From IMG/VR virus record IMGVR_UViG_3300042934_000980, positions 124,001 to 188,000 of that record: a DNA stretch of 64,000 bases. One strand, given 5' to 3'. Numbering within the stretch: the stretch's first letter is position 1; each line of letters opens with the position of its first letter. The translations under genes and the position numbers were made by a program. Positions 17,211 to 60,175 of the stretch are shown piece after piece. The notes beneath the pieces were generated by a model. It did no database searches and had not been told where the DNA came from. It was given only the letters and a program-made list of their open reading frames with translations.

Positions 17211-17227
17211 GTAATATAGGTTTAAAA
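17211..17227 (-). promoter_or_regulatory. Phage early (vRNAP) promoter
   Basis: TTTTAAACCTATATTAC on the minus strand, 35 nt before the HNH start; TATATTAC is the phiKZ early promoter core. Confidence 0.75.
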
Positions 17228-28729: not shown

Positions 28730-31582
28730 ATGTTTAATATGTTTTCAGTCGGAGTCAAGCAAACGGGAGTGTATACCCATATCACTGGCGTTTCTTTTTA
28801 CAGCATTGCCAAGGACATTGAGAAGTTCTTCAGCTCCGGGCTGGTGACCAAGTACATGGTGCGCCGGGAGACGTGGGACACCATCAAGGTCCATGACTTC
28901 TTTCTGGTGGAGCTGCATTACATTCTGGGTGAGCTGCTTAAGATCCGCACCATTCGCAGCCGCAGGCGTGCACTGAGCGAACTTAAGTACCTGCTAGAAA
29001 CTGAGACGTGGATCAAAGACACCCTGACCCCGTCGGGCAAACCGTTTGACTTTAAACGGCTCAATGACTTTGTCAAAACGCCGTTTCCTAAACAGCGTGA
29101 ATTCTTGGAACAATACCCGCTGATTGAAAAGAGCTACCACCTGAGGGGCATCCTGCTCGACTCAGTGGCCGGTAGTGGTAAGGCTCAGCCGTACTCCACC
29201 AAGGTTAAAGTCCCTAAGGGATGGAAACACTTGGGGGAATTGAAAGTGGGGGAAGAAGTGTCCACCCCAGACGGCGACTACGCCAAGATCACCGCCGTGC
29301 ACCCACAAGGGGTCACTGACGTATACCGCTTCCACTTTGAAGATGGGCGTTGGGCTGACTCGCACCCTGAGCACTTGTGGCAGGTCGATGAGATCAGTCG
29401 TATACAAGGCGAGGAGATCATCAGCGCCGACCACATCACCACCACCCAAGACATCCTTAACCACTTCCAAGACTACGAGTACCAGATCCCTTTGGTGGGA
29501 CAGATGGACGGGCTCTTGGAGATGGGTGGGGTTGAGCATGCAGCCATAGCGGAAGAGTTGCTGATCTCAGCAATACCGATAGATGATCCAGTGATGGAAC
29601 TTTCCTACTTGGACCGGTTTGGTATCGTGCGCTCGATGTTGGAGCTGAGCGGCTGTCAGATTGCCCCTACCGGGATTGCGTTCATCACCACCAACCAAGT
29701 GGCGGCTAAGAACTTCCAGAAGCTGGTGTGGAGCGTGGGCGGGATTGCCACGTGGACCGAAGTTCCGGGTAACCCCTTCCGGATTGAACTCTACCACCCG
29801 CAAATTGAATTGATGGTGGAGAACCTGCTCGGTCCTGGGCTGGAGCTGGGGGAGATCATCAGTTTGGAAGATCACCTCAACCTGCGCCTCAAGATCACCG
29901 CGGTGGAGAAACGGCCTCAGGAAGAGACGCTCTGCATCTCGATCGATCACCACGCCCACCTGTACGTCATTGACGACTACATCATCACCCACAACACCTT
30001 TACCTCGCTGATGTGGGCGCATCTGTTGGGTGACGGAGCGACGGTGGTGGTGTGTCCGTTGGGGATTGTTAACGATGTATGGACCAAACAGATCAAGGAG
30101 CACCACAAACAAGAGAAGCGGGTGTGGACCAGCATCAGCGGGCTGCCGCTTGCAGAAGGGTACGACTTCTACATCGTGCACTACGACTTCCTGCGGGGAA
30201 CTGGCTACGGCTACTTAAAGGAGTTCTTGCTTAAGCTTAAAAAGTCCAGCAAGCACGAACTTAAGTTGATCTTGGATGAGTCGCACAACTTTAACGAGAT
30301 CAGGGCCAAGCAAACCCAGCGGTTGATAGAACTGGCGGACCTGCAAGTGTTTGACCATTCCCTGCCCATGTCGGGGACCGCCCTTAAAGCCCAAGGCAGT
30401 GAGATCTACCCCACGCTGTGCCTGATTGACCGGCACTTTGATAAGGTGGCTCGCGAGTTCTTCTTGGCCTCCTACGGGCGTAACCGCCAGTCGCTCATGA
30501 ACATGCTGGCGCACCGCATTGGTCGGGGTAAGTTCACCATCCCAGAACTCTTGGGCTTGGGCGATCCACCTCCGATCAATGTCATCAAGGTGCAAATCCC
30601 GGGTGGGCAGAAGTACACCTTGGATGCGATCAAGCTGGAGATGCAGGTGTACATCCAAGAGCGCATGGCGTTTTACGATGAGCACATGCCCAAGTACCTG
30701 GCCTTCTACAAGGAGGTGTTGTCCAGTTACGAGTTCTCCGTGCAAAAGCACCCCAAGGAGCTGGCGGACCTGCAACGCTATAAAGCCATCGTTAACCGGT
30801 TCCGCACCCAAGGGTATTCCAGTTTCACCGACGCCCAAGACAGTGCATTCTGTAAGCGGGTGGAGGAGGACATTGAGAAGACCCTTAAAGGTCAAGACCT
30901 GCACGATTTCCGCAATGTGAAGTCGGCGGTCAAGTACCTAGGGCTTAAACTGCGCGGCGAAGCGTTGGGTAACGTGTTGGGTAAAGCACGCATCAATGCG
31001 ATCAAGGAAACCATCGAGCACGCAGGCTTACCCGAGCTGATCAACAACGTGGAGAAGAAGACGGTTATCTTCACCTCCTACGTCGACGTTGTGAAGCTCT
31101 GTGATGAGTACCTGCGCGATAAAGGCTTTAAGCCTAACTTGGTCTACGGGGAGGTTAACAAAGACCGTGAAGAGGCTGTCAGAAGCTTTGGTGCGGTGCC
31201 TGAGATCAATCCGTTGATTGCGGCCATGGATTCTCTGAAAGAGGGTATTCCGTTGCTGATGGCCAACCAAACCATCTTCCTCAACGCGCCTTACCGGGAT
31301 TACGAGGTCAAGCAGATGCAAGCCCGTACCTGGCGTACCGGTCAAGACAGCCCGTGTTTCTACTGGCTGATTGACTTGGACACCGGGGATCAGGTGAACA
31401 TCACCACGCGCAGCCTCAACATCTTGGAATGGAGCCGAGAGCAGGTGGATGCATTGCTCAGCCGCAGTGAAGGTCATGCCCTGCTGGGGGATGTAACCGG
31501 TGAAGAAGCCTTTAGCTTGGTGGACGAACCTGTAACCAAACCTTTGCAGGTAAGAGCCGGAGTACTCAGTCTCTTTGGGTAA
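28730..31582 (+). CDS. SNF2/SF2-family helicase containing an intein
   Basis: AAGGA SD before ATG 28730; ILLDSVAGSGK|T, VVVCP, LILDESHN, MSGT, EGIPLLMAN, QMQARTWRTGQ. Confidence 0.9.
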   Translation: MFNMFSVGVKQTGVYTHITGVSFYSIAKDIEKFFSSGLVTKYMVRRETWDTIKVHDFFLVELHYILGELLKIRTIRSRRRALSELKYLLETETWIKDTLTPSGKPFDFKRLNDFVKTPFPKQREFLEQYPLIEKSYHLRGILLDSVAGSGKAQPYSTKVKVPKGWKHLGELKVGEEVSTPDGDYAKITAVHPQGVTDVYRFHFEDGRWADSHPEHLWQVDEISRIQGEEIISADHITTTQDILNHFQDYEYQIPLVGQMDGLLEMGGVEHAAIAEELLISAIPIDDPVMELSYLDRFGIVRSMLELSGCQIAPTGIAFITTNQVAAKNFQKLVWSVGGIATWTEVPGNPFRIELYHPQIELMVENLLGPGLELGEIISLEDHLNLRLKITAVEKRPQEETLCISIDHHAHLYVIDDYIITHNTFTSLMWAHLLGDGATVVVCPLGIVNDVWTKQIKEHHKQEKRVWTSISGLPLAEGYDFYIVHYDFLRGTGYGYLKEFLLKLKKSSKHELKLILDESHNFNEIRAKQTQRLIELADLQVFDHSLPMSGTALKAQGSEIYPTLCLIDRHFDKVAREFFLASYGRNRQSLMNMLAHRIGRGKFTIPELLGLGDPPPINVIKVQIPGGQKYTLDAIKLEMQVYIQERMAFYDEHMPKYLAFYKEVLSSYEFSVQKHPKELADLQRYKAIVNRFRTQGYSSFTDAQDSAFCKRVEEDIEKTLKGQDLHDFRNVKSAVKYLGLKLRGEALGNVLGKARINAIKETIEHAGLPELINNVEKKTVIFTSYVDVVKLCDEYLRDKGFKPNLVYGEVNKDREEAVRSFGAVPEINPLIAAMDSLKEGIPLLMANQTIFLNAPYRDYEVKQMQARTWRTGQDSPCFYWLIDLDTGDQVNITTRSLNILEWSREQVDALLSRSEGHALLGDVTGEEAFSLVDEPVTKPLQVRAGVLSLFG
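29183..29995 (+). mobile_element. Class 3 intein (271 aa) in the helicase Walker A motif, with a degenerate endonuclease remnant
   Basis: GSGK/AQPYSTKV...HPEHLW...TLCISIDHHAHLYVIDDYIITHN/T; Ala1 and the W-C-T triplet. Confidence 0.9.
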
Positions 31583-31595
31583 TATAGGTTCTAAA
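31579..31595 (-). promoter_or_regulatory. Early promoter motif oriented antisense to the helicase
   Basis: TTTAGAACCTATATTAC overlapping the helicase TAA. Confidence 0.6.
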
Positions 31596-33689: not shown

Positions 33690-33706
33690 GTAATATAGGT
33701 CTAAGA
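33690..33706 (-). promoter_or_regulatory. Early promoter
   Basis: TCTTAGACCTATATTAC, 35 nt before the HD gene. Confidence 0.75.
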
Positions 33707-34349: not shown

Positions 34350-34537
34350 TACACCACCCCCAAAGCTTGCATGAGCTTCTCAACCGCCAAGTACCAAGCC
34401 CACGGAAAGCAGACGATGGCCACGCAGGTGCTCACGAAGCCTTTGGCGGCGACCACTCCAAGGAGCCACAGAAACAACCAGAAGCTGGCCACCCAACCGT
34501 GCTTACTACCCAAGCTAAATGAAAACTTCATATCCAC
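34349..34537 (-). CDS. Small membrane protein
   Basis: 62 aa, two hydrophobic segments, AAGGA SD. Confidence 0.7.
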   Translation of the reverse strand: MDMKFSFSLGSKHGWVASFWLFLWLLGVVAAKGFVSTCVAIVCFPWAWYLAVEKLMQALGVV

Positions 34538-34818
34538 TTCCTTAACCAGTTCTTTAGCCGCACCTTAAAGGGCACATGCTCTTTGAGTTCAGGGATTCGT
34601 TCAGGGTTGACCTTAATAGTCAACAAGGCCTGCTCGATTTCTTTTGCTTCATCCTCCAATGCCAGCGCTTCACGGCGCAGCGCGGCAGAGGCTTCAGGGT
34701 CGCTGTGGTACAAGGCCCAACTACCCTGGTGTTTACGCTGGGCTTCTTCGAGCAGGTGTTGACGTGACAGTGTTAAGTGGTGCTTATTCTGGTTATACTT
34801 GCGACCGCTCAATGGCAT
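34528..34818 (-). CDS. Hypothetical protein
   Basis: 96 aa, overlapping operon arrangement. Confidence 0.65.
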   Translation of the reverse strand: MPLSGRKYNQNKHHLTLSRQHLLEEAQRKHQGSWALYHSDPEASAALRREALALEDEAKEIEQALLTIKVNPERIPELKEHVPFKVRLKNWLRKWI

Positions 34819-35135
34819 GATAAACCTTCTTCAGATTCAAGGAATTTGATCATGTCCTCAGCGAAGAGGGCATGCACCGGGGCAAAGTTCTTGGCGCGTT
34901 GCACCAGTGACGCGGTGATGGACACAAAGTAGTGATCGGCACTGCCTTGGGCGACAAAGTACATCCCCTTGACGATCCCCACAGTCTCATTCCACACCAC
35001 GTAAACGTTTCGCTTTACTCCATTACCGAGCTCCAGCACTACCTCACCCAAAAAGACTTTATCTTTGGTGAGTTGATCAACGCCGATGTCAAGTACGGTT
35101 GGATTAAGACGTTGCTTCATAAACAGGTACCTCAA
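34809..35135 (-). CDS. Hypothetical protein
   Basis: About 103-108 aa; GAGG SD before MKQRLNP suggests a slightly later start. Confidence 0.65.
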   Translation of the reverse strand: MRYLFMKQRLNPTVLDIGVDQLTKDKVFLGEVVLELGNGVKRNVYVVWNETVGIVKGMYFVAQGSADHYFVSITASLVQRAKNFAPVHALFAEDMIKFLESEEGLSCH

Positions 35136-35157
35136 TTACAAAATAGCGGACATAAGC

Positions 35158-35184
35158 CCAGTGCCGGTTAATCGCCGGCACTGG
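35158..35184 (-). terminator. Hairpin directly after the alginate-lyase-like gene
   Basis: CCAGTGCCGG-TTAATCG-CCGGCACTGG. Confidence 0.65.
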
Positions 35185-35190
35185 TACTAC

Positions 35191-36315
35191 TTACTTAACA
35201 GCGTCTCGTTGCTCGTTACACCAAGCACGCAGCGCTTTGCCTTCACTATCATCCAGGTTGTCGAGGGTGTCCTCCAACTTGGAAAGATTGTCTTTGGCAG
35301 TTTTCTTCGCCCCGTTCTCAATGTTGCCCTGGATCTGCTTAACCAGCTTTTGAACGCTGGCCAGCTTAGCCTGAGGCACATCTTTGAACAGTTCGTCAGT
35401 GTTCTCCGGCGTTGCAGGTGTGGCTGGGGTAGAAGGAGCCGGGGAGCTACCGTCGGTGGGTGAAGGGGGTACCGGGGTGGTTGGCTTCTCAGGGGCCGTC
35501 GGCTTAAGCGGCGGCAACTGGAAACGCTCAGGAGCATCAAGGTCAAACTGTTCGTTGACCCGCCAGAACGCACCCTCGTCCAGATCAATGATGTCCAGAT
35601 CTAGGGTATCACCGTGGTACAGGGCGCACTCAAAGTGAGCCATGATCGCGGTGCCGTCTTTTTGCTCTTTCACCGGCAGCTTAATGTCGGTCTGGCAGTA
35701 CAGCCCCCACTTGGCGTACAACCCTTTGTCTTCACTGTACGAGCCGTCTTGGTTGATCTTGACGGTCTTGATGATGGGGTTGTTGGACTTCCAGTTGAAA
35801 CCGGCAACAAAGGTGTCTTTGTTGAAGCCAAACGCCAGGTCATAGATCTGACCCCGCTTAACACCCTTGACCAAGATGAACGGCTTTTCCTTGGCCTTGA
35901 AGGTCTCAGCCAACTGCACGTTCAGGTAGTAGGTGTCGGTTTCTTTGTCGTACAGCCACTGTCCTTTAACCAACGGACGGGTGGAGCTGCCGTGCCACTG
36001 AAGCCCGATGGCTTTGCCGTCTGGCCCCAGGTCAAAGATGGCCTGACGTACTGCGATGACGCTGCCTTTGTACTGGCCAATCTTGGCCGCCGCCTTGTTA
36101 CCCGTTTTAGGATCCATCTCACGGGTTTCAGAACGACCGTACTTGGTATTCTCAGTGGGCTTAAGGTCAGCCCCCTTGGTGCGTACGATCGAAATGATCC
36201 GGTCTTTTCGACTGGTGTCCCAGAACTCGTTGTTGAGGTTGGGCAAGTCTTTTTGACTGGTGGTCTTGTTGCAAGGGTCGGTGTGGTTAAAGCAGTTAAT
36301 CTGCGCAAATGGCAT
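35191..36315 (-). CDS. Polysaccharide lyase family 7 (alginate lyase)-like protein with Pro/Thr linker and C-terminal helical domain
   Basis: All three PL7 signature regions in order: TENTKYGRSETRE, LQWHG...PL, YAKWGLYCQ. GAGG SD before ATG 36315; no signal peptide. Confidence 0.78.
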   Translation of the reverse strand: MPFAQINCFNHTDPCNKTTSQKDLPNLNNEFWDTSRKDRIISIVRTKGADLKPTENTKYGRSETREMDPKTGNKAAAKIGQYKGSVIAVRQAIFDLGPDGKAIGLQWHGSSTRPLVKGQWLYDKETDTYYLNVQLAETFKAKEKPFILVKGVKRGQIYDLAFGFNKDTFVAGFNWKSNNPIIKTVKINQDGSYSEDKGLYAKWGLYCQTDIKLPVKEQKDGTAIMAHFECALYHGDTLDLDIIDLDEGAFWRVNEQFDLDAPERFQLPPLKPTAPEKPTTPVPPSPTDGSSPAPSTPATPATPENTDELFKDVPQAKLASVQKLVKQIQGNIENGAKKTAKDNLSKLEDTLDNLDDSEGKALRAWCNEQRDAVK

Positions 36316-36376
36316 GATGAAAGCCTCTGTGGTGATGGAATGCCCTGGGTACTCACTCAAGGCATAACATCCACGG

Positions 36377-36652
36377 TCAACCTTCCAACTGCCGCTTTAA
36401 CTGCTCCCTGAGCAACGCCATCTTTTCACCCAGCGCCAGCATGCGCAGCACCACGTTCTCGCGCTCTGTAACCGTTGCGAAGGTGGGGATCGAATCACGC
36501 AGGTTGGCGATCCGCATTTCAAGCGACAGGATCTCAAGCGACAGACCCAGTTTTTCCGTGGTTTGCGGGGAATCGAGAAGCTGCAACGTGTTAGGAAACG
36601 TTGGTTGCGCACGGCGGTGTTTGAACTCCGCCATGTAGATTACTTGACCCAT
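36377..36652 (-). CDS. Small hypothetical protein (MGQVIYMAEF N-terminus)
   Basis: 91 aa, GAGGT SD. Confidence 0.75.
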   Translation of the reverse strand: MGQVIYMAEFKHRRAQPTFPNTLQLLDSPQTTEKLGLSLEILSLEMRIANLRDSIPTFATVTERENVVLRMLALGEKMALLREQLKRQLEG

Positions 36653-36703
36653 ATAGCACCTCGTAATGATAGTTAGAGCTTACGGTTAAGCGTAGCTGTT
36701 CGA

Positions 36704-36826
36704 CTATGTTGCTTGCACGATAAAAACAAAGCCTGCGATAACAACCCCCACAACCAACCCCACCACCATTACAAAAATGAAGAAGGACCGGTTTGCTTTA
36801 AAGTACTCTTTCCAAAACCCTTCCAT
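36704..36826 (-). CDS. 40-aa single-TM protein (not in ORF track)
   Basis: MEGFWKEYFKANRSFFIFVMVVGLVVGVVIAGFVFIVQAT*, AGGGGT SD. Confidence 0.65.
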   Translation of the reverse strand: MEGFWKEYFKANRSFFIFVMVVGLVVGVVIAGFVFIVQAT

Positions 36827-36854
36827 ACAAAAAATACCCCTAATCAGTTATAAA

Positions 36855-36880
36855 CCTAGTGCCGGAAAACCGGCACTAGG
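36855..36880 (-). terminator. Hairpin
   Basis: CCTAGTGCCGG-AAAA-CCGGCACTAGG. Confidence 0.65.
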
Positions 36881-36886
36881 GTATTC

Positions 36887-37126
36887 TTAGCTTTTCTTGC
36901 TTAGCGTTTGAAGTTGCTTATTCAAACCCTGCAATTGCTGGTGCAGTTCTTGAATGTACAACGCCACCTGTTGTTGATCAACAGGGTCTTTAACAGAAGC
37001 TGATGCCAAAGACAACGCACGAATACGCTTGGCCAGAGCGTCCATGCGTGTTCTGATTTCAAGTATATCCTTTTTTGTTAAACGGCCGGATGGAGAAAAA
37101 TCTGCCATTTGAATCGCCACACCCAT
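36887..37126 (-). CDS. Small coiled-coil hypothetical protein
   Basis: 79 aa, AAGGT SD. Confidence 0.7.
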   Translation of the reverse strand: MGVAIQMADFSPSGRLTKKDILEIRTRMDALAKRIRALSLASASVKDPVDQQQVALYIQELHQQLQGLNKQLQTLSKKS

Positions 37127-37140
37127 GTGCTGGGGACCTT

Positions 37141-37401
37141 TTATTTTCGGTTAGGTTGCTGAAGCACAAGCGGAGGGACATCCCTGCCCAGCGACAAGAA
37201 GTACTGAGTTCTCCTCGCAATAGCCTCTTCGAGTATCGCATTGGCAAGCGCGGTGATGCGTCGCCGTTTCCTAGGTAGGGTCCAAAAACGAATGGACCCA
37301 TAGAGTCGTTCCGCTTCATCGATCAGATCACCGATAAGTCTGAGCTCGTTTACGCGGTACAAAGCACAGTGGGTGTTCTTTAAAGCGACCACCTTGTTCA
37401 C
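37141..37401 (-). CDS. Hypothetical protein
   Basis: 86 aa, GTG start, GGAGGAG SD. Confidence 0.7.
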   Translation of the reverse strand: MNKVVALKNTHCALYRVNELRLIGDLIDEAERLYGSIRFWTLPRKRRRITALANAILEEAIARRTQYFLSLGRDVPPLVLQQPNRK

Positions 37402-37410
37402 AACTCCTCC

Positions 37411-38268
37411 TTAGAACTTAGAGGCTTCGACTTGTTCTTTGGTGAGGTTGTAGTAGTAATAATCAAGGGTACGGCGAGGAAACTGGTCTTCACCCCCTAC
37501 CCAGGCTTGCAACCAGCGACCCGACTGCCCTACCCCTACGGTATAGTGTGCAAAGCGCTTGGAAAGGGCTATCGCCAAATCAGCAATGTCTTCCTTTTCC
37601 AAGGCCCAGACTTCCATCGATACTGTGCCCAAGGCGAGCTCGATACGAAAGTTTTGGACAAACTTAGGTATCGTTTTCATGATCACGCCCTTAAACCCAA
37701 GCTTGAACGCGTAGTCCTCGCGGATCAGGAAGGGCTTGCCGTCTATGTTCCAAGCTACCAGCTTACCGTAGTTGCGCTCATGACCATTCTCGTCGGTACG
37801 AATAACGTCTTCGATAACCTTGGAATGTTCTGTATCCCCATGGCGCCCAACTTCGATATTGCCCACATGGACATGCTCTTCGACGTCTACCGCAGGTGCT
37901 GTTACCGAAAGGTTAAAAGGTTCGCCACCGGTGTCAATGTAGGCCTGCACCAACCGCTGGATGACCTTGCGATGGTCTTGCTGCTCAAACACCATAAACC
38001 AGTGATCGCCCATGGCGTGTTCATGGCCCATGCAGTCCAGGTCCAAACCAAAAGACTCGCCAGTGTCCGGGGCACGGGTCATGAGCTCCAGATGCTCGTC
38101 GCTGTTGTTAACCTGGAGTTCCAGCAAACCCTGAGCATAGAAGCTATGCCCTACCCCCGCATTACTGCCCTTGATAAGGATATCACCAAAGAACGTCTCG
38201 CGGTCAAAGGGGCTGTACAGCGTGCCGGCGGGCAATTCGAGAAACTTTTTCAGGTTTACAATTTTCAT
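37411..38268 (-). CDS. Hypothetical protein
   Basis: 285 aa, AAGGA SD, downstream of an early promoter. Confidence 0.8.
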   Translation of the reverse strand: MKIVNLKKFLELPAGTLYSPFDRETFFGDILIKGSNAGVGHSFYAQGLLELQVNNSDEHLELMTRAPDTGESFGLDLDCMGHEHAMGDHWFMVFEQQDHRKVIQRLVQAYIDTGGEPFNLSVTAPAVDVEEHVHVGNIEVGRHGDTEHSKVIEDVIRTDENGHERNYGKLVAWNIDGKPFLIREDYAFKLGFKGVIMKTIPKFVQNFRIELALGTVSMEVWALEKEDIADLAIALSKRFAHYTVGVGQSGRWLQAWVGGEDQFPRRTLDYYYYNLTKEQVEASKF

Positions 38269-38314: not shown

Positions 38315-38331
38315 ATAATGTAGGTCTGAGA
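38315..38331 (-). promoter_or_regulatory. Early promoter (variant)
   Basis: TCTCAGACCTACATTAT. Confidence 0.65.
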
Positions 38332-52673: not shown

Positions 52674-52690
52674 GTAATATAGGTTTCAGA
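52674..52690 (-). promoter_or_regulatory. Early promoter
   Basis: TCTGAAACCTATATTAC. Confidence 0.75.
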
Positions 52691-54614: not shown

Positions 54615-56336
54615 TTAGTGCGTCTTGACCGCGTGCAGCTTGTCGCCCAACAGCAGGCTGCTGGCATTGGCCAAGATCTTGGCTGTTTGCAGGCCGCCCT
54701 TAAGCGCTGTGACCAACGCGAACGCAGTGTCGTACACACCCAGGTCTTGAGCTTGTCCCGTTTCACCGGTGGCCAAGTTGGTGATGTCCGGTACATTACC
54801 TGCGTACTTTTTGAGCAGCTCTGGCAGGTCAGGTATGTACGCACCCTCGTCGCTTTGCTTGGCCAGATGCACGTACGGCACGCACACCAGCTCGGCTAGG
54901 CGTTCGAGGATCTTTGCATCCGTCTTGTCCCGGGCGAAGGTCACCGGATACAGGCTTTCCTTATTCTTGGGGGCAAGGACCACATGGTCTTGGTGATGGC
55001 AGTGATCATAAAGATCCGACAACACCAACAATCCAGCCTTCATCAACGAGGTACCGGCGCCTGGCAGAATGCCGTTGTCCAACGCACTCTTGACCGCCTT
55101 GACGACGTCCTCGAACCGATCCAAACGCTCCTTCACGTCCGAATAGGTTTCACCGCCCACAAAGATGGTGACCAACTGGCCGCGCAGGTTACGGATCCGG
55201 CTTTCGTTGAACTTGGCGCGTACGCTGAAACGGTCACCCATTTCGTACCCGCTCAGTTCTTGCTCGATGGCATCAGCACGCTGCTGCACGCGCACTAAGG
55301 CATTAGCATCCAGCTCGCTCACCAACGAGCGGCTGTTGCCGACCGTGACGTGCATGTTCGGAACGTTGAACTCCGCACCCACCGCGTCTTGCAGCTGAGT
55401 GAACATCGGCACGCCAAAGATGGTGGCGATATCACCCATGATCAAGCTGCCCACCGAACCACCGGCGTTGGTGTTGATCCCCACGAAAGTTGGGCCGCCC
55501 AGGAAGGTGTTGACCATTCCACCCATGCGTGCACTGGATTTTACTTGGTTATTGATGTTGGCCATGACAGCCCCCACCTCATGCTCGATCGAGCGGGCAA
55601 TGATAAGGATGTGGTCGGTCTGGCCCTTGAACTGGTCATGCAGCTTGATCAGCTCATCGGTCAGGTCCGCACCACGCCCCAGCGTACCGTCGATCACCAC
55701 CGGGATGAAGTTTTCCAGCAAAGTGTCGGCACCGTTGCCGTACTTGCTAAAGCCTGGGTTACTGAAACTCATGTTCAGTGGCAGGCCGTTGCTGTGCACC
55801 ACCTTGTCTTCGCTGCTCTGGCCTTCCTTGAGCTCGATGGCAGGGTAACGATCACCCGACTGCTTGTAGATGTCGGTGATGATGGTCGACAGCTCGTGGT
55901 CGCTGTTGGAGGAGGTCAGGGCCAGCTTGAACAACCGATCGTCTTCCGGGGTAACCTGGATGGCGAGGCTGCGCAGCTTCTTGCCGATCTCACCGATCAC
56001 TTGCTCGATGAAACGCTGTTCACGAAAGCTCTTGAACTGGCTGAGCACGCTGTACAGTTCAGCGGTCAACATGACGGTGGTGGTGGTGCCATCGCCACAC
56101 TCGTGGTCGGTCTTGATCGCCGCTTCAACGATCACCCGGTTAATGACCTCATCACGCGGGTCATCGAACTTGATGGACTTGGCGACCGTCACGCCATCCT
56201 TGGTGACCTTAACCGAGGTGCCGGTGCCGATCAAAGCGAGTTTGCCATTGGGACCCATGGTGGCCACAACTGCTTGGTGTACCTTGGTCATGACGTCTTT
56301 GACCATGTCCTGGGTGTTATCCAAAGTCAGCAGCAT
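54615..56336 (-). CDS. groEL: GroEL-like phage chaperonin (EL gp146-type)
   Basis: TMGPNG, VTKDGVTVAKSI, GDGTTT, KERLDRFEDVVKAVKSALDNGILPGAG; no GGM tail. Confidence 0.95.
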   Translation of the reverse strand: MLLTLDNTQDMVKDVMTKVHQAVVATMGPNGKLALIGTGTSVKVTKDGVTVAKSIKFDDPRDEVINRVIVEAAIKTDHECGDGTTTTVMLTAELYSVLSQFKSFREQRFIEQVIGEIGKKLRSLAIQVTPEDDRLFKLALTSSNSDHELSTIITDIYKQSGDRYPAIELKEGQSSEDKVVHSNGLPLNMSFSNPGFSKYGNGADTLLENFIPVVIDGTLGRGADLTDELIKLHDQFKGQTDHILIIARSIEHEVGAVMANINNQVKSSARMGGMVNTFLGGPTFVGINTNAGGSVGSLIMGDIATIFGVPMFTQLQDAVGAEFNVPNMHVTVGNSRSLVSELDANALVRVQQRADAIEQELSGYEMGDRFSVRAKFNESRIRNLRGQLVTIFVGGETYSDVKERLDRFEDVVKAVKSALDNGILPGAGTSLMKAGLLVLSDLYDHCHHQDHVVLAPKNKESLYPVTFARDKTDAKILERLAELVCVPYVHLAKQSDEGAYIPDLPELLKKYAGNVPDITNLATGETGQAQDLGVYDTAFALVTALKGGLQTAKILANASSLLLGDKLHAVKTH

Positions 56337-56390: not shown

Positions 56391-56407
56391 GTAATATAGG
56401 TTTCAGA
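56391..56407 (-). promoter_or_regulatory. Early promoter of groEL
   Basis: TCTGAAACCTATATTAC, identical to the copy at 52674. Confidence 0.78.
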
Positions 56408-60158: not shown

Positions 60159-60175
60159 GTAATATAGGTTTGAAA
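60159..60175 (-). promoter_or_regulatory. Early promoter
   Basis: TTTCAAACCTATATTAC. Confidence 0.75.

What the first reader, a model, noticed from the sequence alone, without database searches (positions are those of the whole stretch)
35191..36368. Jumbo-phage-encoded PL7 alginate-lyase-like gene: no signal peptide, stand-alone and probably late-expressed
Seen: the three PL7 signature regions occur in the right order. RSETRE (36118-36135) matches canonical RSELRE, QWH (35992-36000) matches QIH/QVH, and YAKWGLYCQ (35692-35718) matches YFKAGxYxQ. The Arg, Gln, His and Tyr catalytic positions are kept. A Pro/Thr linker (PTAPEKPTTPVPPSPT..PATPATP) leads to a ~70-aa helical domain. There is no signal peptide. 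A TTATG motif lies upstream (~36363) and a hairpin follows the stop. Known: PL7 enzymes are beta-jelly-roll alginate lyases, and QIH/QVH correlates with polyG/polyM preference; typical phage depolymerases are beta-helix tailspikes; phiKZ late promoters are marked by TATG. Inference: the phage makes a soluble or virion-tethered alginate lyase, released at lysis or displayed via the helical tail, to clear mucoid biofilm matrix. QWH may mark a distinct specificity.
Basis: partly seen in the sequence, partly recalled or inferred. Interest (0 to 1): 0.88.

Follow-up and report, generated by a model that had tools for sequence, protein, structure and literature searches.

The report
Phage PL7 polyuronate lyase with helical tail
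A 220-kb soil jumbo phage carries a real, free-standing gene for a PL7-type polysaccharide lyase (the alginate-lyase fold) joined to a small conserved helical module; it probably cuts the host's slime polymer late in infection, but substrate, host and virion attachment are untested.

Summary
The gene is window 35191-36315 (-), 374 aa, starting at the ATG at 36315. It matches Pfam Alginate_lyase2 above the curated cut-off. A confident AlphaFold model superposes on solved PL7 lyases (Z 27.8 on P. aeruginosa PA1167; TM 0.81 on A1-II'). The R-x-E-x-R, Q-x-H and Y-x-K-x-G-x-Y-x-Q residues align with the A1-II' catalytic residues and are invariant in 14 phage homologues. There is no signal peptide: residue 1 is already part of the fold.

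The genome is a 220,495-bp, 96%-complete phiKZ-like phage of the EL/RisingSun clade, from soil. The host is probably Pseudomonas.

New findings:
- The family is rare and so far phage-only, with a fixed architecture of PL7 domain, variable linker and three-helix C-terminal module.
- A collinear relative keeps only the linker and helical module, so that module works on its own.
- The TTATG belongs to an oriented TATG signal. It is conserved about 50 nt upstream in six of the seven orthologous loci and also precedes the tail-sheath and major-head genes. A hairpin follows the stop. This fits a monocistronic late unit.

Alginate specificity, virion tethering and a special meaning for QWH are not shown; W, I and F alternate at that position. 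I rate it a new variant of a known kind, of moderate interest.

The parts
35191..36315 (-). Coding sequence of the 374-aa PL7-like lyase (ATG 36315-36313, stop TAA 35193-35191)
   Evidence: ORF. The start is fixed by the AGAGG ribosome-binding site and by the homologues' N-termini. The coding score is high and the GC is 54.0% against 54.1% for the genome.
35521..36315 (-). PL7 beta-jelly-roll catalytic domain (residues 1 to about 265)
   Evidence: Pfam PF08787, 46.6 bits against a cut-off of 29.7. pLDDT is above 90. Z 27.8 to 1vav and 25.8 to 2cws. Foldseek E 4.7e-15.
36118..36135 (-). RSETRE (residues 61-66), the PL7 region R-x-E-x-R
   Evidence: Aligns with RSELRE of A1-II'. R61, E63 and R65 are invariant in 14 homologues.
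35992..36000 (-). QWH (residues 106-108), the PL7 region Q-x-H with the catalytic His
   Evidence: Aligns with QIH of A1-II'. Q106 and H108 are invariant; the middle residue is W, I or F.
35692..35718 (-). YAKWGLYCQ (residues 200-208), the PL7 region Y-x-K-A-G-x-Y-x-Q with the catalytic Tyr (Y206)
   Evidence: Aligns with YFKAGNYVQ of A1-II'. Y200, K202, G204, Y206 and Q208 are invariant.
35401..35520 (-). Pro/Thr-rich flexible linker (residues about 266-305)
   Evidence: pLDDT 38-50 with no secondary structure. Its length ranges from almost nothing to about 75 aa among orthologues.
35194..35400 (-). C-terminal three-helix module (residues 306-374; helices 315-333, 337-352, 360-373)
   Evidence: pLDDT about 85-92. 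Present in all 14 family members. Found alone as the 119-aa protein P0009 at the orthologous position of a collinear relative. No family or fold assignment.
36361..36370 (-). ATGTTATGCC, a phiKZ-type TATG promoter-like motif; the G at 36363 is the putative transcript start, 48 nt before the ATG
   Evidence: The octamer occurs three times in the genome, always between genes, once before the tail-sheath gene. A TATG is kept about 50 nt upstream of the start codon in six orthologous loci. Sense bias is 42 to 14 and the modal distance is 43-66 nt. TATG is the phiKZ late consensus (PMC4666361).
36340..36365 (-). Stem-loop at the very start of the putative 5' leader
   Evidence: -19.3 kcal/mol, z -2.0. 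By eye, several orthologous loci also show a short inverted repeat right after the TATG; this was not tested statistically.
36324..36328 (-). AGAGG ribosome-binding site, 8 nt before the ATG
   Evidence: Read from the sequence.
35158..35184 (-). Terminator-like hairpin CCAGTGCCGG-CGATTAA-CCGGCACTGG, 6 nt after the stop
   Evidence: -22.6 kcal/mol, z -3.9. All seven related loci have a G+C-rich hairpin soon after the stop. A near-copy lies at 36855-36880.

Best explanation
The gene encodes an active PL7-family polysaccharide lyase. This is a beta-jelly-roll enzyme that cuts uronic-acid polymers by beta-elimination, using His108 as the base, Tyr206 as the acid, and Arg61 and Gln106 to neutralise the carboxylate.

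It is made in the cytoplasm of the infected cell from its own TATG-type (non-virion RNA polymerase, late-class) promoter, as a one-gene transcript ended by a hairpin. It has no export signal, so it can reach the host's extracellular polymer only when the cell lyses, or by riding on the virion. The polymer is most plausibly the alginate of a soil Pseudomonas.

The C-terminal three-helix module, joined by a linker of unconstrained length, is a separate docking or oligomerisation unit. Its partner is unknown.

Shown: the fold, the catalytic residues and their conservation, the domain architecture, the transcription signals, the phage context, and the autonomy of the C-terminal module.

Inferred: enzyme activity, substrate, timing, host, and the role in clearing matrix for progeny spread or adsorption.
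For: Fold and motifs:
- Pfam PF08787 above the cut-off; all 14 homologues match it.
- The family profile aligns RSELRE, QIH and YFKAGNYVQ of A1-II' with the phage motifs.
- The model has pLDDT 89. The top 42 PDB hits are PL7. Z is 27.8 to PA1167 and 25.8 to A1-II', then falls to 18 for PL18, 15 for PL20 and under 13 for other jelly rolls.
- R61, E63, R65, Q106, H108, K117, Q134, Y200, K202, G204, Y206 and Q208 are invariant across homologues that share only 22-65% identity.

Native gene: GC and codon usage equal those of the genome.

Transcription: TATG motif statistics, conservation and sharing with the sheath and head genes; hairpin after the stop.

Host hint: the best tail-fibre matches are Pseudomonas jumbo phages. 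The only homologue in 50,697 phage records is gp117 of P. syringae phage Nican01.

Endolytic hint: the loop before the Q-x-H strand is as short as in A1-II'. By the rule in PMC9345997 this predicts longer oligomer products.
Against: - No activity data exist for any member of this phage family.
- PL7 also contains beta-glucuronan lyases, and 7nde scores Z 25.0, so alginate is only one candidate.
- The host is not identified. The core genes are equally close to Erwinia phages.
- The gene lies in a block of small genes of unknown function on the strand opposite the tail-fibre operon, not in a structural module.
[quoted passage not shown] Here it also precedes a helicase gene and an HNH gene, so late timing is probable, not proven.
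- An early-like promoter variant at 38315-38325 lies upstream on the same strand, although a hairpin at 36855-36880 intervenes.
Confidence: 0.62

Rival explanations
1. It is a virion-displayed depolymerase. The C-terminal three-helix module docks the enzyme onto the capsid or tail, so each particle carries a tethered jelly-roll lyase that digs through exopolysaccharide during adsorption. This differs from the best explanation only in where the enzyme acts.
For: - The helical module is present in every homologue.
- It is kept as an intact 119-aa gene in a collinear relative that has no PL7 domain, as expected for a part with a structural partner.
- A catalytic domain, a Pro/Thr linker and then a binding module is the usual layout of tethered carbohydrate enzymes (general knowledge).
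- It has a late-type promoter like the virion genes.
- The tail-fibre operon starts about 2 kb away.
Against: - The module has no similarity to any known virion, anchor or decoration domain.
- No paralogue of the module exists in the genome.
- Known phage depolymerases anchor by N-terminal domains and are trimeric beta-helices.
- The gene is outside structural modules in all loci seen.
- The linker is almost absent in P0003-P0005, so a long reach is not required.
Confidence: 0.25
2. It is a lyase for a polymer other than alginate, such as glucuronan or another uronate-containing capsule, exopolysaccharide or O-antigen, in a host that need not be Pseudomonas.
For: - PL7 includes glucuronan lyases. 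7nde scores Z 25.0 against 25.8-27.8 for the alginate lyases.
- Identity to any characterised PL7 is only about 20%.
- Core genes are as close to Erwinia phages as to Pseudomonas phage EL.
- The fourth residue of Y-x-K-A-G is W, M, A, Y, S, V, L or I in the family rather than the usual A.
Against: - The nearest structures are alginate lyases, including the one from P. aeruginosa.
- The only cultured carrier infects P. syringae, an alginate producer (the alginate point is general knowledge).
- The tail fibre resembles those of Pseudomonas phages.
Confidence: 0.3
3. The jelly roll is a non-catalytic sugar-binding (lectin-like) module, or it has an intracellular role unrelated to matrix degradation, such as an accessory or counter-defence function.
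For: - There is no export signal.
- The neighbours are small genes of unknown function.
- In a 277-kb relative the next gene is an Acb1-family anti-CBASS gene.
Against: - The full catalytic set is invariant across 14 divergent homologues, which a binding-only module would not need.
- No polyuronate substrate is known in the cytoplasm.
- The adjacency to Acb1 was seen once only.
Confidence: 0.07

Closest known systems
PA1167 of Pseudomonas aeruginosa (PDB 1vav), a minimal single-domain PL7 alginate lyase
   Same: Same beta-jelly-roll fold: Z 27.8, rmsd 1.8 A over 211 of 222 residues. In both, the fold starts at residues 1-3 of the chain with no leader in front. The catalytic regions are the same.
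   Different: Only 20% identical. The phage protein carries a Pro/Thr linker and a three-helix C-terminal module that PA1167 lacks. It is encoded by a phage.
A1-II' of Sphingomonas sp. A1 (PDB 2cws/2zaa), the mechanistic reference for PL7
   Same: RSELRE, QIH and YFKAGNYVQ align with RSETRE, QWH and YAKWGLYCQ. TM 0.81 and rmsd 2.6. The loops flanking the cleft have equal length (PMC9345997).
   Different: About 20% identity. The segment after Q-x-H is 5 residues shorter in the phage protein. W replaces I in Q-x-H and W replaces A in Y-x-K-A-G.
Virion-borne phage alginate lyases and other phage depolymerases (phages PT-6, AF; beta-helix tailspikes)
   Same: A phage-encoded lyase presumed to open the host's exopolysaccharide (review PMC10975011).
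   Different: Those are described as tail components, and typical depolymerases are long trimeric beta-helices with N-terminal anchors (criteria in PMC13385381). This one is a 374-aa jelly roll with a C-terminal helical module, encoded outside the structural modules.
Nican01 gp117 (XAI70130.1) and the metagenomic homologues P0002-P0017
   Same: Same architecture and the same invariant residues. All lie in phage-like contexts.
   Different: 22-65% identity. All are annotated only as hypothetical proteins, and one as 'cytidine deaminase' by its source. None has been characterised.
PL7-like proteins of soil giant viruses (Hyperionvirus, Edafosvirus) in BFVD
   Same: They are the only strong viral structural matches, E about 8e-13.
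   Different: They belong to viruses of eukaryotes and share 13-18% identity. Whether they have the helical module was not examined.

Membership tests
Polysaccharide lyase family 7 (PL7) | Beta-jelly-roll (beta-sandwich) catalytic fold | tested here: met
   The model has pLDDT 89. Z 27.8 to 1vav and 25.8 to 2cws. TM by target 0.81-0.84.
Polysaccharide lyase family 7 (PL7) | Conserved region R-x-E-x-R | tested here: met
   RSETR at residues 61-65, aligned to RSELR of A1-II'. R61, E63 and R65 are invariant. Region definitions are from PMC8618178.
Polysaccharide lyase family 7 (PL7) | Conserved region Q-x-H (catalytic His) | tested here: met
   QWH at residues 106-108, aligned to QIH. Q and H are invariant.
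Polysaccharide lyase family 7 (PL7) | Conserved region Y-x-K-A-G-x-Y-x-Q (catalytic Tyr) | tested here: met
   YAKWGLYCQ at residues 200-208. Y, K, G, Y and Q are invariant. The A position varies and is W here.
Polysaccharide lyase family 7 (PL7) | Sequence-profile membership (Pfam Alginate_lyase2 / dbCAN PL7) | tested here: met
   PF08787 scores 46.6 bits against a cut-off of 29.7, and 14 of 14 homologues match. dbCAN and the CAZy subfamily were not available.
Polysaccharide lyase family 7 (PL7) | Beta-elimination activity on alginate or another polyuronate | not testable with these tools
   This needs an enzyme assay. No member of the phage family has been characterised.
Virion-associated phage depolymerase (tailspike or tail-fibre type) | Trimeric beta-helix catalytic domain with an N-terminal virion anchor | tested here: not met
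   The fold is a jelly roll from residue 1. There is no N-terminal extension.
Virion-associated phage depolymerase (tailspike or tail-fibre type) | Encoded within the tail or structural module | tested here: not met
   The gene lies in a minus-strand block of small genes of unknown function. The same holds in Nican01 and the other loci.
Virion-associated phage depolymerase (tailspike or tail-fibre type) | Physical presence in the virion | not testable with these tools
   This needs virion proteomics.
phiKZ-type late (non-virion RNA polymerase) transcription unit | TATG at the transcript start, upstream of the gene | tested here: inconclusive
   The motif is present 48 nt upstream, conserved in orthologous loci, oriented and enriched, and shared with the sheath and head genes. 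The start site and the timing were not measured, and the motif also precedes helicase and HNH genes.
phiKZ-type early transcription unit | Extended AT-rich early consensus (here ACCTATATTAC preceded by a T-rich stretch) | tested here: not met
   The gene's own spacer has no such motif. The nearest copies are at 38315-38325 (a variant, upstream, with a hairpin in between) and at 33690-33700 (downstream).

The most novel reading that the evidence does not exclude
The three-helix C-terminal module may be a new kind of docking domain that tethers a small jelly-roll lyase to the phage particle, or to another phage assembly, through a flexible leash. That would be a mode of depolymerase display unrelated to beta-helix tailspikes. 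The passenger enzyme would be exchangeable or dispensable, as in the collinear relative that keeps only the module.
Probability: 0.2. Interest if true: 0.65.

Novelty: new variant of a known kind. Interest (0 to 1): 0.45.

Why it matters
Phage depolymerases are studied almost entirely as beta-helix tailspikes, and search pipelines even require that shape (PMC13385381). This family therefore escapes them: the one copy in a cultured phage is labelled hypothetical.

If the enzyme is active, it adds a compact, signal-less PL7 lyase to the phage toolkit against exopolysaccharide. It would be a candidate anti-biofilm enzyme for alginate-producing Pseudomonas. The detachable helical module also gives a concrete question about how phages deploy such enzymes.

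Separately, the analysis yields candidate early (ACCTATATTAC) and late (TATG) promoter signals for an uncultured EL/RisingSun-like jumbo phage.

Tried and rejected
- Single-sequence phmmer against PDB sequences found no PL7 chain. Only the family profile did, at E 0.0014.
- PHROGs had no family for the protein and NCBIfam had none.
- Megablast of the region against 50,697 phage records found nothing.
- The first AlphaFold run, with 6 sequences, was poor at the N-terminus: pLDDT 63.5, with residues 1-76 under 50. It was replaced by a 14-sequence run.
- A profile search of the 5.8-billion-protein set added only one new member.
- For the C-terminal module, the ESM Atlas feature and structure search gave only generic helical bundles under the reliability thresholds. 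There is no paralogue in the genome. The weak hits to CG11900/3nqw and to the repeat protein P0011 were judged compositional.
- The sigma-70 scan found nothing upstream of the gene, as expected for a phage with its own RNA polymerases.
- My first length-greedy gene caller mis-called antisense ORFs in this 54% GC genome. A codon-model caller replaced it, but it still missed the conserved 86-aa gene at 37141-37401.
- Recent horizontal acquisition was rejected, because GC and codon score match the genome.
- QWH as a specificity marker was rejected (PMC8618178).
- No RNA runs hold the sequence, only soil DNA metagenomes.

Full report
**Observation.** The minus strand carries an open frame at 35191-36360. 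Its real start is the ATG at 36315. An AGAGG lies 8 nt upstream, and all close homologues begin at the equivalent Met. The product has 374 residues. The Pro/Thr-rich stretch, the C-terminal helical region, the TTATG at 36367-36363 and the hairpin after the stop (35158-35184; -22.6 kcal/mol, z -3.9) are all present.

**Is it a PL7 lyase?**
- Pfam Alginate_lyase2 (PF08787) matches at 46.6 bits, E 4.7e-12, above the curated cut-off of 29.7.
- A single-sequence search of PDB sequences found no PL7 chain. A profile of the six closest homologues did find A1-II' (2cws). It aligned RSELRE, QIH and YFKAGNYVQ with the phage motifs. By the chain numbering these correspond to Arg146, Gln189, His191 and Tyr284 of A1-II'.
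- A first AlphaFold model from 6 sequences was weak. A second, from 14 diverse homologues, reached mean pLDDT 89, with values above 90 over residues 1-270.
- Foldseek returned PL7 structures as its 42 best PDB hits: 2cws at E 4.7e-15 and TM 0.81, and 1vav at TM 0.84.
- VIA-align gave Z 27.8 and rmsd 1.8 A over 211 of the 222 residues of P. aeruginosa PA1167. Z falls to 18 for PL18, 15 for PL20 and below 13 for unrelated jelly rolls.
- Across 14 homologues sharing 22-65% identity, R61, E63, R65, Q106, H108, K117, Q134, Y200, K202, G204, Y206 and Q208 are invariant, and all 14 match PF08787.
- Such conservation of the catalytic set argues for an active enzyme rather than a binding module.
- The fold begins at residue 1 (model 3-235 aligns to PA1167 2-223), and the N-terminus has no hydrophobic stretch. 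There is therefore no signal peptide, although no dedicated predictor was available.

**Genome and host.**
- The window is bases 124001-188000 of a 220,495-bp viral record judged 96% complete. It comes from soil metagenomes.
- It encodes a phiKZ-type RNA polymerase beta subunit, a GroEL and virion proteins.
- Its RNAP subunit and major head protein are 61-68% identical to Erwinia phages RisingSun/Joad and to Pseudomonas phage EL. It is thus a new lineage of that clade.
- The tail fibre is most like those of Pseudomonas jumbo phages, including two that infect P. syringae. Pseudomonas is the most likely host, but this is not shown.
- The gene's GC (54.0%) equals the genome's (54.1%) and its codon score is high. 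It is a resident gene, not a recent import.

**How common is it?**
- Only one of 50,697 phage records has a homologue: gp117 of P. syringae phage Nican01, annotated as hypothetical.
- A word-indexed search of 5.8 billion proteins found five close relatives. An exhaustive HMMER search of 1.84 billion representatives found 12 proteins at E up to 0.001.
- Every context that could be read is phage-like: jumbo contigs of 108-278 kb, and neighbours such as RusA, thymidylate synthase, SNF2 helicase and Acb1.
- In the BFVD library of viral structures the only strong matches belong to giant viruses of eukaryotes from soil.
- A preprint on soil viruses counts 33 PL7 annotations among 1.43 million viral genes (10.1101/2024.12.20.629349). 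Phage PL7 genes have therefore been tallied, but I found none characterised.

**Architecture.**
- Every member has the PL7 domain, a linker of very variable length (almost none in P0003-P0005, about 75 residues in P0006) and a C-terminal helical module. One member has three such modules in tandem (P0016).
- The module is predicted confidently as three helices. It matches no Pfam, PHROG or NCBIfam family, and only generic helical bundles in the ESM Atlas. It has no paralogue in the genome.
- The most telling result comes from locus L006, which is collinear with the window gene by gene. At the PL7 position it has a 119-aa gene (P0009) made up only of the linker and the helical module, 38% identical to the window's.
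- The module therefore functions without the enzyme. Because the two-part architecture is found in distant phages, loss of the PL7 domain in that lineage is more likely than gain. This is inference.

**Transcription signals.**
TATG is the phiKZ late consensus with its G as the start site, but it is necessary rather than sufficient (PMC4666361).
- I called genes over the whole genome and examined the spacers between them.
- TATG is strongly oriented in spacers between co-directional genes: 42 sense against 14 antisense, TTATG 22 against 5, and TATG[CT]C 10 against 1. A third of the sense copies lie 43-66 nt before a start codon. The PL7 copy lies at 48 nt.
- The exact octamer ATGTTATG occurs three times in the genome, always between genes. 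One copy is 84 nt before the tail-sheath gene. The major-head gene has TTTATGTGC upstream.
- Six of the seven orthologous loci, with proteins 41-63% identical (the C-terminal module alone in L006), keep a TATG about 50 nt upstream of the start codon. In the jumbo relatives it usually sits just after a hairpin and a T-run. In L011 the only TATG lies further upstream, directly after the hairpin.
- All seven loci also have a G+C-rich hairpin soon after the stop.
- A different, extended motif, ACCTATATTAC with a T-rich leader, resembles the well-conserved extended element reported for phiKZ early promoters. It occurs about a dozen times, all on the minus strand between genes, for example before GroEL. 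None lies in the PL7 spacer.
- The gene thus looks like a one-gene unit with a late-class promoter and its own terminator.
- There are caveats. TATG also precedes a helicase gene and an HNH gene. An early-like variant at 38315-38325 lies upstream on the same strand behind a hairpin at 36855-36880. No RNA data exist.

**Mechanism proposed.** The phage makes a cytoplasmic PL7 endolyase late in infection. The loop before the Q-x-H strand is as short as in A1-II'. By the published rule this predicts longer oligomer products (PMC9345997), which suits thinning a matrix rather than feeding on it; this is a low-weight inference. Without an export signal, the enzyme meets extracellular polymer only at lysis or on the particle. 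The helical module is a docking or oligomerisation unit, and whether it binds the virion is open. Alginate is the leading candidate substrate for three reasons: the nearest structures are alginate lyases, the likely hosts are pseudomonads, and the cultured carrier infects P. syringae. A glucuronan lyase scores nearly as well (Z 25.0), so the substrate remains unproven.

**On QWH.** The middle residue is W in 8, I in 5 and F in 1 of the 14 homologues, and the QIH/QVH rule has many exceptions (PMC8618178). In a beta-strand this side chain should point away from the cleft that Q and H face (inference; I could not inspect coordinates). I see no basis for reading QWH as a specificity marker.

**Verdict.** The finding is real and the core annotation is right. 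It is a new variant of a known kind: a known enzyme family and a known phage strategy, in an undescribed, phage-restricted architecture with a free-standing gene. Interest is moderate. The most testable open point is the role of the detachable helical module, and the cultured phage Nican01 offers a direct experimental route.

Noticed in passing
L006:8001-8360 and L007:2275-2634 (protein P0009): A relative that is collinear gene by gene with window 34528-38268 carries, at the PL7 position, a 119-aa gene made up only of the Pro-rich linker and the three-helix module. The identical protein is present in two separate sequencing runs.
   Followed up: partly
window 17211-17221, 31579-31589, 33690-33700, 52674-52684, 56391-56401, 60159-60169 (all minus strand); variant at 38315-38325: An extended motif, ACCTATATTAC preceded by a T-rich stretch (often TTTTTAACTTACAG), recurs about 12 times in the genome. 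All copies are on the minus strand between genes, including one before GroEL. It looks like the early (virion RNA polymerase) promoter of this phage.
   Followed up: partly
window 31579-31589 (-): One copy of the early-like motif sits right at the stop codon of the plus-strand helicase gene (28730-31582) and points antisense into it. The next minus-strand gene is 2.9 kb away. This may be an antisense transcript or an unannotated gene.
   Followed up: no
window 35158-35184 and 36855-36880: Two near-identical hairpins (core GTGCCGG...CCGGCAC; 0 expected by chance) bracket the pair formed by the 91-aa gene and the PL7 gene. Many terminator hairpins in this genome are followed at once by (T)TATG, so each unit's terminator abuts the next unit's promoter.
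   Followed up: partly
window 36340-36365; L004, L006, L008, L009 upstream regions: A short stem-loop begins at or just after the TATG in the window and in several orthologous loci. It is conserved in position but not in sequence. In phiKZ the region downstream of TATG is needed for late-promoter activity (PMC4666361).
   Followed up: no
L021:7043-7621: In a 277-kb contig the PL7-like gene (P0017) is followed directly by an Acb1-family (anti-CBASS) gene. This was seen once only.
   Followed up: no
window 37141-37401 (-): This 86-aa ORF was missed by my gene caller, but it is conserved (47% identity) at the same position in L006, so it is probably a real gene.
   Followed up: partly
protein P0016 (431 aa): This family member has three tandem copies of the C-terminal helical module. 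Its source labels it 'cytidine deaminase', which looks like a mis-annotation.
   Followed up: no
window 54615-56336 (-): A GroEL-type chaperonin gene (phrog_5725, E 7e-119), as in Pseudomonas phage EL, with the early-like promoter motif 62 nt upstream.
   Followed up: no
BFVD entries A0A3G5A6J6 (Hyperionvirus) and A0A3G4ZVM8 (Edafosvirus): The only strong viral structural matches to the model are PL7-like proteins of soil giant viruses of eukaryotes. The Edafosvirus alignment spans 355 columns, so that protein may also have a C-terminal extension.
   Followed up: no
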